This document shows positions 9,060-48,473 of a stretch of DNA of 64,000 nt, one piece after another. Below the pieces are notes generated by a model. It ran no database searches. It saw only the letters and a program-made list of their open reading frames with translations, and was not told the origin of the DNA. The stretch covers positions 62,001 to 126,000 of the IMG/VR virus record IMGVR_UViG_3300037042_006844. One strand, written 5' to 3'. The position numbers were made by a program, and so were the translations under genes. The number at the start of each line of letters is the position of its first letter. Position 1 is the stretch's first letter.

Positions 9060-9469
9060 AACTTTTGTAAATCGATGGTTTGTTTAACTGCCTCCATCGG
9101 AATATAAGTAGTAACAAAATTTCCCTCGTCAACAGTTTTTAAGTCTGGCAATTTGTTTTTATCCACCACGATAATAACTCCGTTGTTTTTGTCTCTGTAG
9201 TTTACCAGAGCGAACCTTGCAGCTAATTTGAAATCACTAGCCAAATAACTGCCATGTATATTGCGAGTGTTACCCTTTCCTTTCGAGGTAACTTTACCAT
9301 GTTTTTGCAATATGTCCAGTTCTTTTTTACTCATACCTCTAAATAATTCGTCGGGACCAAACGTATCCATTTGATCCAACTTATCAGCAACATCTTTGAG
9401 TTTGCCTTGCGGCTCCCAAACGAGGTAATCGTAAATGCTGCGTTCGTATAGCAATCTGTAGCGTTTCAT
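9056..9469 (-). CDS. possible ADP-ribosyltransferase-fold protein
   Basis: LFRGM ... GSYLASD..LAARFA resembles R-S-type ART strands. Confidence 0.4.
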   Translation of the reverse strand: MKRYRLLYERSIYDYLVWEPQGKLKDVADKLDQMDTFGPDELFRGMSKKELDILQKHGKVTSKGKGNTRNIHGSYLASDFKLAARFALVNYRDKNNGVIIVVDKNKLPDLKTVDEGNFVTTYIPMEAVKQTIDLQKL

Positions 9470-9587
9470 ATCAATAAATAGGCATGTGGGCACAAAAAAA
9501 GGTCAGCACATTATATGCTGACCTTTGAAATGGTGGACGTGGGGAATTATTTTTGACATTTTCTCATCACCTCCACTATTTATTGGT

Positions 9588-10169
9588 ATGGCAAAAACTC
9601 AAGTAAAATGCGAATCATGTGGAAATCTTTTTCAAAAAGAAAACAAAGAAATCAACCGTTGTAAAAAACGAGGTATCGTTGGGCACTATTGCAGTAATTC
9701 ATGTGTAGCAAAACATAGAAACTCAACAAGGACAAAACAGTATTGGGAAAAGCAATACGCTAAACACCCCACACTAAAAGGATTGGCAAACAATCGAGAA
9801 GACATATATTCTCCGTTCAGACCATTCCTAAACAAAGGACGAGCATCACTCAAAAAGAATGGATGTGATATTGATGTGGAATATCTAAAGAAACTTTGGG
9901 ATGAACAGCGAGGAAAGTGTCCATATACTGGTGTTCAAATGATATTGCCGAAAAACACACTGGATCACACAACAGTAAAATCACTGAAAAAAGCAAGTCT
10001 TGATCGTATAGATTCCTCTCAGAGTTATATCAAAGGAAATATTGAATTTGTTTGTATGGCAGTCAATTTAGCAAAAAACAATTTCACAAAAAAAGCCATG
10101 ACTTCATTTTTACGCGAAGTCATGGAATCTATGAATGCTCTTAGTGTTAATCAAGTGCAACCAACGTGA
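9588..10169 (+). CDS. HNH/His-Cys-type homing endonuclease inserted at the tmRNA 3' end
   Basis: Zn-finger CxxC...YCSxxC N-terminus; GKCPYTG...SLDRIDSSQSYIKGNIEFVC..VNLAK. Confidence 0.8.
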   Translation: MAKTQVKCESCGNLFQKENKEINRCKKRGIVGHYCSNSCVAKHRNSTRTKQYWEKQYAKHPTLKGLANNREDIYSPFRPFLNKGRASLKKNGCDIDVEYLKKLWDEQRGKCPYTGVQMILPKNTLDHTTVKSLKKASLDRIDSSQSYIKGNIEFVCMAVNLAKNNFTKKAMTSFLREVMESMNALSVNQVQPT

Positions 10170-10190
10170 CGGTGGCATTCTTCTGCACTC

Positions 10191-10571
10191 TGGACGTAAC
10201 GGGAGTTGAACCCGTGTCTTTAAGAACTGTTAGCTCCGGACTACATGTGTATGCAGTTTGAATTTGTTAGGAAATGCAATCGAAACTACCAAAAATGCAC
10301 TTCTTAGGATTTGCTGTATTTCGATTGAAACCACAGATCAACTTTTTCAATCATAGTTCGTAAATGACATTTGTTTCGGCTACCGAACGATCACCGAACA
10401 AACGGACAACCTTTATTAGGCTGCAACTGCTGCGACATTCTCGTAAGAGAAGTCATAGCTCACTACATTTTCCTTAGCGGTTAATGTTTAGATAGATTTT
10501 TTAGGAAGCCAACTATCATCTTCCACATGCCCATTGCGAACGCACTCTTAAATCGAAACCAGTATACGCCC
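10191..10571 (-). ncRNA. ssrA: tmRNA, tag peptide AKENVVSYDFSYENVAAVAA*
   Basis: Acceptor GGGCGTA/TACGTCC with G3.U70, T arm GGGTTCAACTCCC, tag ORF 10478-10416 ending AA*; CCA not encoded. Confidence 0.92.
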
Positions 10572-10600
10572 GTAATTATTTGTATCAAAGATCAAAAAAT

Positions 10601-10672
10601 TGGTTGCTGGAGTGAGTGTCGATCCCACTTGACAAACCTTATGAGAGTTCGTCCCTTGCCGAAGGTCCAGCA
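10601..10672 (-). tRNA. atypical tRNA-CAT (Met/Ile2)
   Basis: Acceptor TGCTGGA/TCCAGCA-A-CCA, loop ctCATaa, tiny D arm, T loop ATCGACA. Confidence 0.65.
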
Positions 10673-10716
10673 GTTTCTGCTAACTGTTTATAACTATAAC
10701 AGAACCCAGATAAAAG

Positions 10717-11616
10717 TCAAGTGGAAAGTGTATTTTCACACGGCTCATACAGTTTTATGTAGTCTTTTCCATATTTTTTCTCCACATATTGTATAAACGG
10801 ACCGATGTCATTTTTGCCAATCACTTGTAATTTATGAGGAAAATATGCAAATTTTGCCTCAACCTTATCGTCCATATATCCTTTCACTTCCACATAATCA
10901 CCATTCTCCAAAATAAAATCTGGAAAAAATTTTAACTTTTTTCCAGCAAATTCATATTGAAATCCGTCGGTATTTCTTTTGAAATTTACGCCATGTTCCA
11001 ATTGATAAACTACCCATGCCAATTCCCACGAACTATTACAATAATACCCTTTATACCACCCTTGCTTCCCGCGACCTCCCTTGACACGATATCCACCCGA
11101 TTTGCCTTTCATATATCCGGTTTTTACCGCCCACTCACCATAACATTTATGAGAGCAACAGATTCTTTTAGATTTTTTAGTTTTGTAAAATGGCAGTTGA
11201 CATATAGGGCAGTTCAAATAGTTGCCGGTTTTTGGATTGTTTTTATAAAATCCAATTATTGTTTTGGATTTGTCGGATAATATTTTCTTTTCAACATCAG
11301 TCCACCTATGATGCCCACCATTTTTTTGGGTATAAATTGCAGCACATTTTGATGAACAATAATTATTATCATACCTTTTCTCAAATGGGATAGCGGAATT
11401 ACAATGTAAACATTTTTTAGGGGATTTATAATATTCTTCCCGCCGCATCTCGTGTTTTTGTGGAAGATGGTCCGCAATTGTGTGTTTGTTGTGCTCTCTG
11501 CTACAAACATTAGAACAGAAATGATTTTTATATCCTTTCTTACCCATTCTTTTTATTTCGGAAATGGATTTTGGAAATTCTATACTACATTGGGAACAAT
11601 TTACTGGTATTTTCAT
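10717..11616 (-). CDS. homing endonuclease, PD-(D/E)xK type with Zn-finger repeats
   Basis: Three CxxC..CSxxC units; SSWE...FFPDFIL...YVEVKGY. Confidence 0.75.
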   Translation of the reverse strand: MKIPVNCSQCSIEFPKSISEIKRMGKKGYKNHFCSNVCSREHNKHTIADHLPQKHEMRREEYYKSPKKCLHCNSAIPFEKRYDNNYCSSKCAAIYTQKNGGHHRWTDVEKKILSDKSKTIIGFYKNNPKTGNYLNCPICQLPFYKTKKSKRICCSHKCYGEWAVKTGYMKGKSGGYRVKGGRGKQGWYKGYYCNSSWELAWVVYQLEHGVNFKRNTDGFQYEFAGKKLKFFPDFILENGDYVEVKGYMDDKVEAKFAYFPHKLQVIGKNDIGPFIQYVEKKYGKDYIKLYEPCENTLST

Positions 11617-11637: not shown

Positions 11638-11757
11638 TGGAGCGAAAAGAAGGTTTTTGAACTGACTATTTTAGTTAGATTTGGTTCACATGGAGAATTT
11701 TGAAATCTCGCATTATCAGTTTGGAAGACTGACGCTCTACCATTGAGCTATACCCGC
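11638..11757 (-). pseudogene. degenerate tRNA-Gly(TCC)
   Basis: Perfect 5' half GCGGGTATAGCTCAATGGTAGAGC..ctTCCaa; T arm and 3' acceptor scrambled; CGCTCCA end displaced. Confidence 0.6.
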
Positions 11758-13120: not shown

Positions 13121-13369
13121 TGACGTAGCTGTAGCCGATGTCCTGTTCTATTCCTACATTTATCTCAGCATTGCTGCTGGTTGTTCGTTAAAAACAACTG
13201 CTCCAACCTTGTCCTAATAACGTGCAGCACTACACTCGGACACTTTAGGATTACTGCTAATTTGTGGTAATAACGAGTTAAAAACTCTTCCAACATCTGC
13301 TGTGCAGCATCGAACTTCCTCTAACACTGAATGGTCAAATCCAATGCCAGCGTAGGATCGCTTGCGTCA
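13121..13369 (-). ncRNA. rnpB: RNase P RNA (compact, ~250 nt)
   Basis: P1 GACGCAAGC/GCTACGTC; GAGGAAGTTCGATG pairs with CATCGGCT (P4 with bulged U); P2 TCCTAC/GTAGGA after AGATAAAT; P3 hairpin. Confidence 0.85.
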
Positions 13370-13456
13370 AAATTAAATAATTCTTTATATAAAGGGCATC
13401 ATTGCCAATTCATATTCATATTTATATACTCAATCGGTCAACCCCGATTTGCAACA

Positions 13457-14089
13457 ATGAACACAATGAAAACCACAATGATGAAACTTGTTTTAACGAT
13501 GATGTTAACATCATTCTGTTTGGTATCAAACGGAGGCACCATTTTTGGAACCTCGCATGACCTCGGCACAAAAGGCTGGGGAACAACAGAAACATGTAAA
13601 TTTTGTCACGCGCCACATCAAAACCAAGCTGTAGCAAACGCTCCCCTTTGGAATCGCACGTTAACAGTTCAAACATATGTTCTATATGGCAGTCCTTCTT
13701 ATAAAGGAAAAGGTAATCAGCCCGGAGTAGAATCGTTGATGTGTTTGAGTTGTCACGATGGAACTGTCGCACTTGATTCTTTTGGAAACGGTGGAATCAT
13801 ACAACAAGGCACTCATATGATCGGTGAAAATCGAATGATTGGTGGTAAAGGCACCCTTGCCCACGATCATCCAATCGCATTTGCATATGATGCAGCACTA
13901 TTGGCAGAAGATAATAAACTAGTTCAGCCAGTGTCGGCAGCATTCGTTGATGCAAGCCATAATATTCCATTGTATGCAACCAAAATGGAATGTGCTTCAT
14001 GCCATGACCCGCACGATAATGGTTTCGGCAATTTTTTGCGTATGGACAATTCAGCAAGTGGATTGTGCATAAAATGCCATTTGAAATAA
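13457..14089 (+). CDS. secreted multiheme cytochrome c (doubled-CXXCH / cytochrome c3-like family)
   Basis: Signal peptide; four CXXCH (CKFCH, CLSCH, CASCH, CIKCH), CHxPH and DHPI motifs. Confidence 0.9.
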   Translation: MNTMKTTMMKLVLTMMLTSFCLVSNGGTIFGTSHDLGTKGWGTTETCKFCHAPHQNQAVANAPLWNRTLTVQTYVLYGSPSYKGKGNQPGVESLMCLSCHDGTVALDSFGNGGIIQQGTHMIGENRMIGGKGTLAHDHPIAFAYDAALLAEDNKLVQPVSAAFVDASHNIPLYATKMECASCHDPHDNGFGNFLRMDNSASGLCIKCHLK

Positions 14090-33135: not shown

Positions 33136-33167
33136 ATTACCCTCAAAGCGTGATGCTTTGAGGAAAG

Positions 33168-33255
33168 CTCTAGGAGTTGGACTTGAACCAACGACGGGGT
33201 TATTCACCCTACAGATTAACAGTCTGTTGCCTGCTACCAACTCGGCTACCCTAGA
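33168..33255 (-). tRNA. tRNA-Asn(GTT) with long variable arm, no CCA
   Basis: ctGTTaa, G73, extra arm GGGTGAATAACCC. Confidence 0.78.
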
Positions 33256-47775: not shown

Positions 47776-48402
47776 ATATATGTTCAGACCAGTTTGAAAA
47801 AAATGCCCGAATGGATCGTGGAGACAGATTACATGTTTCCGACTTCCGCGATGAGTCCCAACAGTTCATAGGGAATTAAACAGGACTCGCTAAACAGCTA
47901 AAACAACCATTATTTCCCATTGATTAGCCCATTCGGTAAATCAATTTAGCTGGCAGTAATCCATCTGGTGTATGTATTACATTTATGACGTATGGTGAAT
48001 TTCGGATTCCAGCCGAACTCAGTCCTCTAGCGTCTATTACCAGCCAAAGCCAAAAATTAAATTTGAGGATTTCACGCTTTATTCGTTCCGAATGAAGGGC
48101 TTTGACCCATATACCCCACTGGAGGGCGGGTGCTTTAGATTTAAGCTACATCGTCTATCTCAAAAAAATTGGTGGATGCTATCGTGACCCTTACGCCGGA
48201 TTTTTACCGGAGCAACATAATCTAACCCGTGGCAAAACGGAGATAACCTATGCTGCTACTCAAAGAAGGATCTGTGGTTTGCAATCACTTAGCCTTCTAA
48301 AAAATCAATATAGAGCTTTTCAACCCGCCCACTGAAGGGCTATGCTTAATCTTACATCACGCAAGGAATCACCCCTGGTGAAAGAGGCTCTATAAAATTG
48401 AA

Positions 48403-48473
48403 TGATGTCGGTGGGACTCGAACCCACATCAAGCCCTTGAACGGGCTTCTCTACCATTGAGCTACACACATCA
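48403..48473 (-). ncRNA. tRNA-like RNA, 6-nt anticodon loop, no CCA
   Basis: canonical D and T arms, arm AAGCCC-GTTCAA-GGGCTT. Confidence 0.5.

What the first reader, a model, noticed from the sequence alone, without database searches (positions are those of the whole stretch)
9531..10200. Homing endonuclease inserted at the tmRNA 3' end with a replacement end
tmRNA ends TACGTCCA without CCA at 10191. Beyond the antisense HNH gene is AATTCCCCACGTCCACCA (9548-9531) followed by the terminator, i.e. the displaced original end. The element apparently supplies a new, cleavage-resistant 3' end.
Basis: partly seen in the sequence, partly recalled or inferred. Interest (0 to 1): 0.6.

Follow-up and report, generated by a model that had tools for sequence, protein, structure and literature searches.

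The report
Homing endonuclease cassette at phage tmRNA end
A 657-bp selfish DNA cassette carrying only a nuclease gene sits between the last base of a giant phage's tmRNA gene and its CCA tail, flanked by two copies of the gene's 3' end; sister phages lack it, and the same nuclease family sits beside tmRNA genes in many phages and in a cyanobacterium.

Summary
The window comes from a 303-kb phage record. Its tmRNA gene (10571-10191, minus strand) ends at the discriminator A with no CCA. A 193-aa ORF lies antisense at 9588-10169. A second, partial copy of the tmRNA 3' end with CCA lies at 9548-9531, just before the terminator.

Contigs from two other studies join 9533 directly to 10191. They are otherwise identical and carry one normal end with CCA plus the terminator. 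So 9534-10190 is a 657-bp presence/absence element bounded by a 7-nt repeat. A third sample holds both forms.

The ORF is a TRASH/FCS zinc finger fused to a PacI-like HNH domain, and it is under purifying selection. Relatives at 56-73% identity occupy the same position in other phages. In three near-identical pairs with and without the gene, the whole T-arm next to the gene is swapped, and in one of them (L017) the displaced copy keeps the native sequence. That is the pattern of co-conversion during homing.

Of the 80 best family members in IMG/VR, 46 abut a tmRNA gene and 13 a tRNA gene. A Calothrix chromosome shows the same arrangement.

Cleavage, immunity and RNA maturation remain untested. 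In the window's own lineage the functional end is not demonstrably foreign. Verdict: a real new variant of free-standing homing endonuclease.

The parts
10191..10571 (-). tmRNA gene. Tag AKENVVSYDFSYENVAAVAA. Ends at the discriminator A (10191); CCA is not encoded.
   Evidence: ARAGORN; Rfam RF00023, 116 bits. The acceptor 5' GGGCGTA pairs with 3' TACGTCC.
9534..10190 (.). The 657-bp presence/absence element. It is bounded by the 7-nt repeat ACGTCCA, so the junction can be shifted by up to 7 nt.
   Evidence: Contigs of runs X2 and X7 join 9533 to 10191 with 0-1 other letters in the flanks. Run X6 holds both forms.
10153..10190 (-). Conserved hairpin that starts 1 nt after the discriminator. 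Its 5' arm is non-coding; its 3' arm lies in the last HNH codons.
   Evidence: RNAfold. In 11 loci helix 1 is 100% paired, with 3 covarying pairs; slid controls give 21-41% paired. G-U pairs fit the tmRNA-sense strand only.
9588..10169 (+). 193-aa homing-endonuclease-like gene: N-terminal TRASH/FCS zinc finger (C8, C11, C35, C39) and C-terminal PacI-like HNH (beta-beta-alpha-metal) domain with D139-R140, N151 and N160.
   Evidence: PHROG endonuclease/HNH families, 1.6e-18. Invariant columns. AlphaFold pLDDT 90. PacI best structural match, Z 7.4 over 109 residues, followed by many HNH domains. PacI motif alignment. dN/dS 0.09-0.26.
9568..9581 (-). Cassette-borne arm, AAATAGTGGAGGTG, next to the HNH start codon. 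It is the inverted complement of the displaced end.
   Evidence: Fold of 9525-9590: -18.1 kcal/mol, z -2.7 on the plus strand. A comparable stem between this arm and the displaced end is predicted in most of the 11 loci, and it is more stable on the HNH-sense strand in 10 of 11.
9531..9548 (-). Partial second copy of the tmRNA 3' end (T-loop tail, T-stem 3' strand, acceptor 3' strand, A, CCA). It has a 1-2-nt deletion and a C that would mispair with A7.
   Evidence: The variant in run X6 reads T-stem CCCGT plus CACGTCC plus ACCA, which is this lineage's own T-stem. All antisense relatives carry CAC(G/A)TCCACCA here.
9498..9526 (-). Native intrinsic terminator of the tmRNA gene, now 657 bp from the functional end.
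   Evidence: It follows CCA directly in alleles without the gene: L013 and X2/X7.
10717..11616 (-). Second homing-endonuclease-like ORF (299 aa). It has the same zinc-finger N-terminus but a different, PD-(D/E)XK-like C-terminus. It is a neighbour, not part of the cassette.
   Evidence: 38% identity to HNH residues 3-50. Weak Phage_endo_I and PHROG endonuclease hits. Contigs of X2, X6 and X7 diverge at 10675 into an intact tRNA 3' end.

Best explanation
Positions 9534-10190 are a free-standing homing-endonuclease cassette inserted at the 3' end of the phage's tmRNA gene, between the discriminator base and CCA. Its only gene encodes a two-domain enzyme: a zinc-finger DNA-binding module and a PacI-like HNH nuclease.

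Inferred mechanism. In a mixed infection the enzyme cuts the intact tmRNA gene of a phage that lacks the cassette. The cut is probably in or near the T-loop, because that is where the duplicated segment begins in the lineages examined. Repair copies the donor's T-arm, acceptor strand and the cassette. The recipient's own broken end, from the T-loop to CCA and the flank, survives on the far side as the displaced copy. The insertion separates the T-arm and acceptor from CCA and the flank, which would destroy the target and make carriers immune.

The gene stays usable because the copy next to the tmRNA body is complete up to the discriminator. A conserved hairpin follows it, and host 3' processing and the host CCA-adding enzyme must finish the RNA.

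The displaced end pairs with a cassette-borne inverted copy just upstream of the nuclease start codon. This is probably a regulatory or terminator hairpin, or a protein-binding site.

Shown: the anatomy, the presence/absence polymorphism, co-conversion in sister lineages, the nuclease fold, and the family-wide linkage to tmRNA genes.
Inferred: cleavage, the cut position, immunity, RNA maturation, and the role of the hairpins.
For: 1. Polymorphism. Contigs from two other studies skip exactly 657 bp (9533 joined to 10191, 7-nt overlap), with 0-1 differences over 87-234 nt on one side and 485 nt on the other. One sample holds both forms. L003 (with the gene) and L022 (without) differ at 1 of 382 tmRNA positions.

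2. Empty alleles have a single end. The 21 distinct alleles without the gene in this tmRNA group end in CCA followed directly by the flank. L013 has the same terminator as the window.

3. Co-conversion. In L017/L028, L005/L021 and L019/L030 the tmRNA bodies differ at 6-9 of about 360 positions, but the T-arm differs at 6-7 of 17 (Fisher p 1e-5 to 3e-7). The allele with the gene always carries the GCGAG/CTCGC arm. The remnant in L017/L077 is identical to the native end over 17 nt.

4. Nuclease. PHROG hits; PacI is the top structural match at Z 7.4, then Cas9, McrA and endonuclease VII HNH domains; motif alignment to PacI; dN/dS 0.09-0.26.

5. Family-wide linkage. Five of six further homologs fetched (54-73% identity) lie next to a tmRNA gene. 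Of the 80 best IMG/VR loci, 46 abut a tmRNA gene (standard or permuted) and 13 a tRNA gene, in both orientations. The chromosome of Calothrix NIES-267 has a homolog 58 nt after its CCA-less tmRNA.

6. The nuclease genes are far more divergent (dS about 1 between L003 and L077) than the tmRNA genes they sit in. This points to independent acquisitions.

7. Precedent. T4 SegB, a free-standing endonuclease in a tRNA cluster, recognises the T-psi-C stem-loop motif (PMC2330249).
Against: - No enzyme activity, cut site or immunity has been measured.
- The catalytic histidine of canonical HNH enzymes is an invariant arginine in this family. This matches PacI, but activity is only inferred.
- In the window's lineage the empty allele has the same T-arm and acceptor as the functional end. 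Import of a new end is therefore not shown here, and gain cannot be told from loss.
- Across alleles, the association of the GCGAG arm with the gene is not significant (4 of 7 against 4 of 21, p 0.14). T-arm swaps also occur between two alleles that both lack the gene (L021/L054).
- The remnant keeps CACGTCCACCA intact, so if that alone were the target the carrier would not be immune.
- No CCA-adding enzyme or SmpB gene was found in the 89%-complete record, so maturation depends on an unknown host.
- One homolog (L164) has no tmRNA beside it.
Confidence: 0.78

Rival explanations
1. The nuclease-like protein is not selfish. It is a dedicated partner of tmRNA, for example a factor for 3' maturation or for protecting the gene, and that is why it is kept next to tmRNA genes. 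The duplicated end would be a by-product.
For: The linkage to tmRNA genes is very consistent across phages and a cyanobacterium, in both orientations. Purifying selection is strong. A conserved hairpin joins the tmRNA end to the gene's last codons. The catalytic histidine is missing.
Against: Near-identical phages do well without it. Most tmRNA alleles of this group lack it. Flanking T-arms are swapped together with the gene. The gene is much more divergent than its host gene. A decayed remnant of the gene's C-terminal end seems to lie beside one tmRNA (L041).
Confidence: 0.08
2. It is a miniature integrative element (a mini-island, or a cis-mobilisable remnant) placed by a tyrosine integrase acting in trans. 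Such elements regenerate the tRNA or tmRNA gene and leave a displaced 3' fragment.
For: Regenerated target plus displaced fragment is the hallmark of islands in tmRNA genes (PMC4383910). The repeats run from the T-loop to the 3' end.
Against: The 657-bp element holds one ORF and no integrase. The same single nuclease gene is the cargo in dozens of loci. In L017, L005 and L019 the replaced stretch (the whole T-arm, at least 30 nt) is longer than the displaced copy (about 17 nt), which conservative site-specific recombination would not produce. The hosts are phage genomes.
Confidence: 0.04
3. In the window's lineage specifically, the distal partial copy was carried in with the cassette from an earlier host and is not the local displaced end. 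Only CCA and the terminator would be native, and the functional end was never replaced.
For: The empty alleles in X2 and X7 are identical to the functional end plus CCA. The remnant has C where the local gene has T at acceptor position 66. In L003 the remnant differs from the local native end at 5 positions.
Against: The X6 variant of the remnant carries the T-stem CCCGT, the same T-stem as this lineage's functional end. In L077 the remnant is exactly native. The empty alleles could instead be revertants formed by recombination between the repeats.
Confidence: 0.3
4. It is a degenerate group I intron in the tmRNA T-loop, with an antisense endonuclease gene. The distal copy would be the true 3' exon.
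For: Group I introns, some with endonuclease genes, interrupt tmRNA genes in the T-loop at positions 2, 3, 7 and 8 (PMC11915505). The distal copy starts at about that position.
Against: There is no intron or ribozyme signal even at E<=10. Only about 20 and 55 nt are non-coding. The proximal end is complete, and in the window and L005 the 5' strand matches it (A7-U66), whereas the window's distal copy carries a deletion and a mispair.
Confidence: 0.01

Closest known systems
Free-standing phage homing endonucleases, especially T4 SegB (GIY-YIG) in the tRNA gene cluster, and mobE/SegF 'intronless homing'
   Same: A lone nuclease gene between or next to genes, with presence/absence polymorphism among related phages and co-conversion of flanking markers. 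SegB's recognition site contains the conserved T-psi-C stem-loop motif of tRNA genes (PMC2330249; review PMC2988022; PMC2790892).
   Different: The nuclease type differs: a PacI-like HNH with a TRASH zinc finger. The target is the tmRNA gene. The insertion lies inside the gene's mature 3' terminus (between the discriminator and CCA) and is flanked by a duplicated gene end, so the RNA gene is regenerated rather than merely neighboured.
Genomic islands and prophages integrated in tmRNA/tRNA genes (Islander/TIGER type)
   Same: The element lies at the 3' part of the tmRNA gene. The gene is regenerated and a displaced 3' fragment marks the far end (PMC4383910).
   Different: There is no integrase. 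The element is only 657 bp with a single cargo gene. The replaced stretch and the displaced stretch differ in length. The regenerated end lacks CCA. The host is a phage genome.
[quoted passage not shown]
   Same: Mobile DNA that targets the T-loop region of tmRNA genes and leaves tmRNA function intact (PMC11915505).
   Different: There is no ribozyme and no splicing. Function is kept by a duplicated DNA end, and the endonuclease belongs to another family.
Restriction endonuclease PacI (PDB 3m7k/3ldy)
   Same: Best structural match (Z 7.4 over 109 residues). Shared motif with Asp-Arg in place of Asp-His, Gly-Tyr, Asn, and Cys..Asn..Lys.
   Different: Sequence similarity is weak (E 0.11, 14% identity). 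This protein has an added N-terminal TRASH zinc finger. Its role is in a mobile element, not restriction, and its oligomeric state and target are unknown.

Membership tests
HNH (beta-beta-alpha-metal) nuclease superfamily | beta-beta-alpha-metal fold | tested here: met
   AlphaFold model, pLDDT 90. The best structural match is PacI (Z 7.4), followed by HNH domains of Cas9, Gme, McrA, endonuclease VII and Cap5.
HNH (beta-beta-alpha-metal) nuclease superfamily | Catalytic His at the end of the first strand (the first H of HNH) | tested here: not met
   That position is an invariant Arg (R140, motif SLDRID) in 66 homologs. PacI aligns with the same Asp-Arg. From memory, PacI is reported to use a tyrosine to start cleavage, and Y113 and Y147 are invariant here.
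HNH (beta-beta-alpha-metal) nuclease superfamily | Conserved Asp/Asn metal and structural residues | tested here: met
   D139 and N160 are at least 90% conserved and N151 is invariant.
HNH (beta-beta-alpha-metal) nuclease superfamily | Match to curated HNH profiles | tested here: inconclusive
   No Pfam or NCBIfam hit. PHROG endonuclease / endonuclease VII / HNH families hit at 1.6e-18 to 8e-10.
Free-standing homing endonuclease gene | Presence/absence at one site in otherwise near-identical genomes | tested here: met
   X2 and X7 skip 657 bp; X6 holds both forms. L003 against L022.
Free-standing homing endonuclease gene | Co-conversion of flanking sequence together with the gene | tested here: met
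   T-arm swapped in 3 of 4 near-isogenic pairs, p 1e-5 to 3e-7. Not seen in the window's own lineage.
Free-standing homing endonuclease gene | Not inside an intron or intein | tested here: met
   No ribozyme signal. The ORF is antisense to the tmRNA gene.
Free-standing homing endonuclease gene | Site-specific cleavage of the empty allele, and immunity of the carrier | not testable with these tools
   Needs purified protein and DNA substrates.
Integrase-type island in a tmRNA gene | Tyrosine (or serine) integrase encoded in the element | tested here: not met
   The only ORF of 60 aa or more with homologs is the nuclease.
Integrase-type island in a tmRNA gene | Regenerated target plus displaced fragment of matching extent | tested here: not met
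   Both copies exist, but the replaced tract (at least 30 nt) is longer than the displaced copy (about 17 nt) in L017, L005 and L019.
Group I intron in the tmRNA T-loop | Ribozyme core and splice-compatible boundaries | tested here: not met
   No match at E<=10. Too little non-coding sequence.

The most novel reading that the evidence does not exclude
A large, undescribed family of PacI-like HNH/TRASH endonucleases (at least 546 loci in IMG/VR, plus cyanobacterial chromosomes) is specialised on tmRNA genes and acts as an integrase-free 'island'. Each cassette regenerates the RNA gene with a portable copy of its 3' end. It uses the displaced end as its downstream homology arm, so it can home into any tmRNA gene whatever lies beyond it. 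It has also recruited that displaced end, paired with an inverted copy, as an operator or hairpin that controls its own expression. Cycles of gain and precise loss between the repeats would explain the mosaic T-arms of phage tmRNA genes.
Probability: 0.3. Interest if true: 0.75.

Novelty: new variant of a known kind. Interest (0 to 1): 0.62.

Why it matters
tmRNA genes were known to host integrase-driven islands and T-loop group I introns. This adds a third way in: a lone nuclease gene that lands inside the mature 3' terminus and keeps the gene alive by duplicating its end and handing CCA addition to the host.

It gives a concrete, testable enzyme-target pair, with the natural empty and occupied alleles already in hand. 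It suggests a cut position. It links the T-psi-C motif recognition known for T4 SegB to a different nuclease family. It offers an explanation for T-arm mosaicism and CCA-less tmRNA genes in phages and some bacteria.

For annotation, it warns that tmRNA 3' fragments next to small nuclease genes are not island boundaries.

Tried and rejected
- Searches with the single protein in viral contigs, and DNA similarity to the phage collection, found nothing. Relatives came only through the large protein database, a tmRNA 5'-end pattern and a profile.
- Relatives cannot be drawn for a virus record.
- Pfam and NCBIfam give no nuclease name.
- Foldseek alone gave no match at E<=0.001. The exhaustive aligner was needed.
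- A breakpoint between window and L013 could not be placed, because their tmRNA bodies are only about 78% alike.
- Allele-level association of the GCGAG T-arm with the gene is not significant (p 0.14). Only the paired comparisons carry weight.
- An intron, an integrase island and an assembly artefact were considered and rejected (see rivals).
- Covariation in the hairpin that contains the displaced end was examined only by folding each locus. Loop lengths differ too much for a clean alignment, so its function is left open.
- A late-promoter-like ATAAATAG motif on the tmRNA-sense strand at the start of the nuclease gene was noted but not tested.
- No CCA-adding enzyme or SmpB gene was found in the record.
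- RNA runs held too little of the stretch, and the single read-laying run went to DNA contigs, so expression is unknown.

Full report
**Context.** The window is bases 62001-126000 of a 303,564-bp IMG/VR virus record that is 89% complete. It holds 32 tRNA calls and one tmRNA gene, together with PhoH and tail-like genes. It is therefore a huge phage. tmRNA genes are known in such phages (PMC7162821).

**Observation.**
- ARAGORN and Rfam place the tmRNA on the minus strand at 10571-10191.
- The acceptor stem is intact: GGGCGTA pairs with TACGTCC, including the G3-U pair. The discriminator A at 10191 is followed by GAG, not CCA.
- 30 of the 32 tRNA calls in the window encode CCA, so the missing CCA is unusual for this genome.
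- One ORF, 9588-10169 on the plus strand, lies antisense.
- Beyond its start codon, on the tmRNA-sense strand, comes a 14-nt arm (9581-9568), then an A-rich spacer, then AATTCCCCACGTCCACCA (9548-9531), then a strong terminator at 9526-9498.
- The 11-mer CACGTCCACCA is unique in the window.

**The empty allele exists.**
- Logan contigs from four runs were laid on 9300-10800.
- In runs X2 and X7, from two other studies, one contig joins 9533 to 10191 and skips 657 bp. Seven letters (ACGTCCA) fit either side. There are only 0-1 other differences over 87-234 nt on one side and 485 nt on the other.
- That allele reads ...CCCGT TACGTCC A CCA followed directly by the terminator, which is a normal tmRNA end.
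- Run X6 holds both forms. Contigs of the empty form break at the junction (a loose end before 10191 shows it). A separate 706-nt contig carries the cassette with 24 differences.
- The element is therefore 9534-10190, and it is polymorphic in natural populations of this phage.
- The X6 cassette has two insertions in the distal copy. With them it reads T-stem CCCGT, acceptor CACGTCC, then ACCA. This is the lineage's own T-stem, so the window's version is the same copy with a 2-nt deletion.

**Relatives.**
- A pattern from the tmRNA 5' end found 66 IMG/VR loci. The 21 distinct alleles of this tmRNA group that lack the gene end in CCA followed directly by the flank.
- L013 has nearly the same tag peptide as the window (one residue differs). 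It has the window's terminator immediately after CCA.
- Protein homologs at 54-73% identity were fetched from seven clusters. In five of the six in phage or metagenome contigs the gene lies antisense just after a tmRNA gene, with the same junction (CGTCCA, then RAGTRCAGA) and a distal CAC(G/A)TCCACCA. The sixth, L164, has the distal copy but no tmRNA gene beside it.

**Co-conversion.** Four pairs with the same tag peptide, one member with the gene and one without, were aligned.

| Pair (with / without) | Body mismatches | T-arm mismatches | Fisher p |
|---|---|---|---|
| L017 / L028 | 7 of 357 | 7 of 17 | 3e-7 |
| L005 / L021 | 9 of 372 | 6 of 17 | 1e-5 |
| L019 / L030 | 6 of 355 | 7 of 17 | 2e-7 |
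| L003 / L022 | 1 of 357 | 0 of 17 | 1 |

- In the first three pairs the allele with the gene carries the same arm, GCGAG-TTCGACT-CTCGC, and so does L160.
- In L017/L077 the distal copy is identical to the native end over 17 nt.
- The replaced tract (the whole T-arm plus acceptor strand, at least 30 nt) is longer than the displaced copy (about 17 nt, starting at T-loop position 6-7). That fits double-strand-break repair with asymmetric conversion, and does not fit an integrase crossover.
- Caveats. At allele level the arm is not significantly tied to the gene (p 0.14). Two alleles that both lack the gene also differ mainly in the T-arm (L021/L054). That could reflect earlier visits followed by loss.
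- In the window (against L013) and in L005 (against L021) the 5' strand reads A7 opposite U66, where the compared alleles without the gene have G7-C66. The 5' end therefore matches the proximal copy, which marks it as the functional one.

**The protein.**
- There is no Pfam or NCBIfam hit. PHROG endonuclease, endonuclease VII and HNH families match at 1.6e-18 to 8e-10.
- Sixty-six homologs share four invariant cysteines in an N-terminal TRASH/FCS-type zinc finger.
- They also share a C-terminal block, CPYTG ... SLDRID ... Y ... N ... N..K.
- The AlphaFold model is confident, with pLDDT 90.
- An exhaustive structural search ranks the PacI-DNA complex first (Z 7.4, 109 residues). Many HNH domains follow. 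Foldseek agrees weakly.
- A profile aligns the motif to PacI's VDRSD..GY..N..C..CN..K (E 0.11).
- The canonical histidine is an invariant arginine, as in PacI. From memory, PacI is reported to start cleavage with a tyrosine, and two tyrosines are invariant here.
- dN/dS is 0.09-0.26, so the protein is under selection.
- Its synonymous divergence (about 1 between L003 and L077) far exceeds that of the tmRNA genes it sits in. This implies separate acquisitions.

**The family.**
- The profile found at least 546 loci in IMG/VR.
- Of the best 80, 46 lie within about 150 nt of a tmRNA gene. These include standard and two-piece permuted forms, in either orientation. A further 13 lie within 100 nt of a tRNA gene.
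- In a second phage clade the gene lies in the sense orientation. There a decayed copy of the T-loop-to-discriminator segment sits between the functional end and the gene.
- L103 has a perfect 21-nt repeat on both sides.
- The Calothrix parasitica NIES-267 chromosome has a 326-aa homolog 58 nt after its CCA-less tmRNA. A hairpin there is again built on a copy of the 3'-terminal letters.

**Two conserved hairpins.**
- The first starts one base after the discriminator. It pairs non-coding letters with the last codons of the nuclease gene.
  - In 11 loci all 7 pairs of its outer helix are always formed, and 3 of them covary. Slid controls give 21-41% paired.
  - Its G-U pairs fit only the tmRNA-sense strand.
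  - I infer that it is a 3'-trailer structure for processing or protecting the CCA-less precursor.
- The second pairs the displaced end with the cassette arm next to the start codon.
  - A comparable stem is predicted in most of the 11 loci, and it is stronger on the nuclease-sense strand in 10 of them.
  - Its role is open: a leader hairpin, a terminator or a protein-binding site.

**How it most likely works.**
- The enzyme recognises the conserved block from the T-loop to CCA and the flank in an empty tmRNA gene.
- It cuts near the T-loop. Repair from a carrier then copies the T-arm, the acceptor strand and the cassette.
- The recipient's right-hand end is retained as the distal copy, and in later events that copy can serve as the downstream homology arm.
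- Splitting the T-arm and acceptor from CCA and the flank gives immunity.
- Recombination between the repeats would restore a normal gene with CCA, which may be what X2 and X7 show.
- Maturation needs host enzymes, since no CCA-adding enzyme or SmpB gene was found in the record.
- None of the biochemical steps is shown.

**Comparison with what is known.** The closest systems are:
- Free-standing phage homing endonucleases, above all T4 SegB, whose site contains the T-psi-C motif (PMC2330249; PMC2988022; PMC2790892).
- Integrase islands that regenerate tmRNA genes and leave a displaced fragment (PMC4383910).
- T-loop group I introns (PMC11915505).

The recent tmRNA census lists only islands, introns and permuted forms. 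I found no report of a free-standing endonuclease at the tmRNA terminus. This element works like the first kind, looks like the second, and shares its target region with the third.

**Verdict.** It is a real feature and a new variant of a known kind. It is proven for one sister lineage (L017), but not for the direction of events in this lineage, and not for resistance to cleavage.

Noticed in passing
window 10717-11616 (-), 11693-11757 (-), breakpoint at 10675/10676: A second homing-endonuclease-like ORF (299 aa) shares the zinc-finger N-terminus with the HNH gene but has a PD-(D/E)XK-like C-terminus. It follows a tRNA-Gly(UCC) that is cut off after the T-stem 5' strand and has no acceptor 3' strand. 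Contigs of X2, X6 and X7 diverge from the window at 10675 into an intact tRNA 3' end (...CTCGC TACCCGC T CCA). This looks like a second polymorphic insertion in a T-loop, this time without regenerating the gene.
   Followed up: partly
window about 10600-10672 (-): A 71-nt tRNA-like sequence lies directly upstream of the tmRNA. It has an acceptor ending ACCA and a possible CAU anticodon loop. It is conserved in L013 but called by neither ARAGORN nor Rfam. L009 has a tRNA-Met(CAT) at the equivalent place.
   Followed up: no
L021 vs L054; L041: Two alleles without the gene, with the same tag, differ almost only in the T-arm (4 of 17 against 2 of 372). L041, which also lacks the gene by the protein search, carries next to its tmRNA a short stretch resembling the 3' end of the sense-clade nuclease gene. 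This suggests past visits and decay.
   Followed up: partly
L100, L113, L115, L119, L131, L133, L137, L140, L148: Family members abut two-piece (permuted) tmRNA genes. Others abut tRNA-Ala, Leu, Ile, Arg, Ser or Cys genes.
   Followed up: no
L167 2062-3481 (Calothrix parasitica NIES-267 chromosome): A longer bacterial homolog (326 aa) lies 58 nt downstream of the chromosomal tmRNA gene, which also lacks encoded CCA. Several other heterocystous cyanobacteria have 310-335-aa homologs.
   Followed up: partly
L164: A 56%-identical homolog keeps the inverted repeat and a decayed displaced end. No tmRNA gene lies beside it in the 3.6-kb locus.
   Followed up: no
window 9577-9584 (-) and the same place in L003, L005, L077, L078, L160, L162: An ATAAATAG / TATAAATA motif, resembling a T4-type late promoter, lies on the tmRNA-sense strand directly at the nuclease start codon.
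   Followed up: no
window 13331-14089 (+): An ORF with several CXXCH motifs and multihaem cytochrome c Pfam hits (Paired_CXXCH_1, 6e-9) lies inside the phage's tRNA region.
   Followed up: no
L097 3489-3898, L153 3566-3979, L138 4241-4414, L143 3293-3395 and 4315-4469: GOLLD, RAGATH-9 and RAGATH-20 RNAs lie within 1-2 kb of family nuclease genes in related viral contigs.
   Followed up: no
window 33167-33255 and 48402-48473: These are the only two tRNA calls without encoded CCA. One is an over-long Asn call and one has an undetermined anticodon. They may be pseudogenes or further disrupted genes.
   Followed up: no
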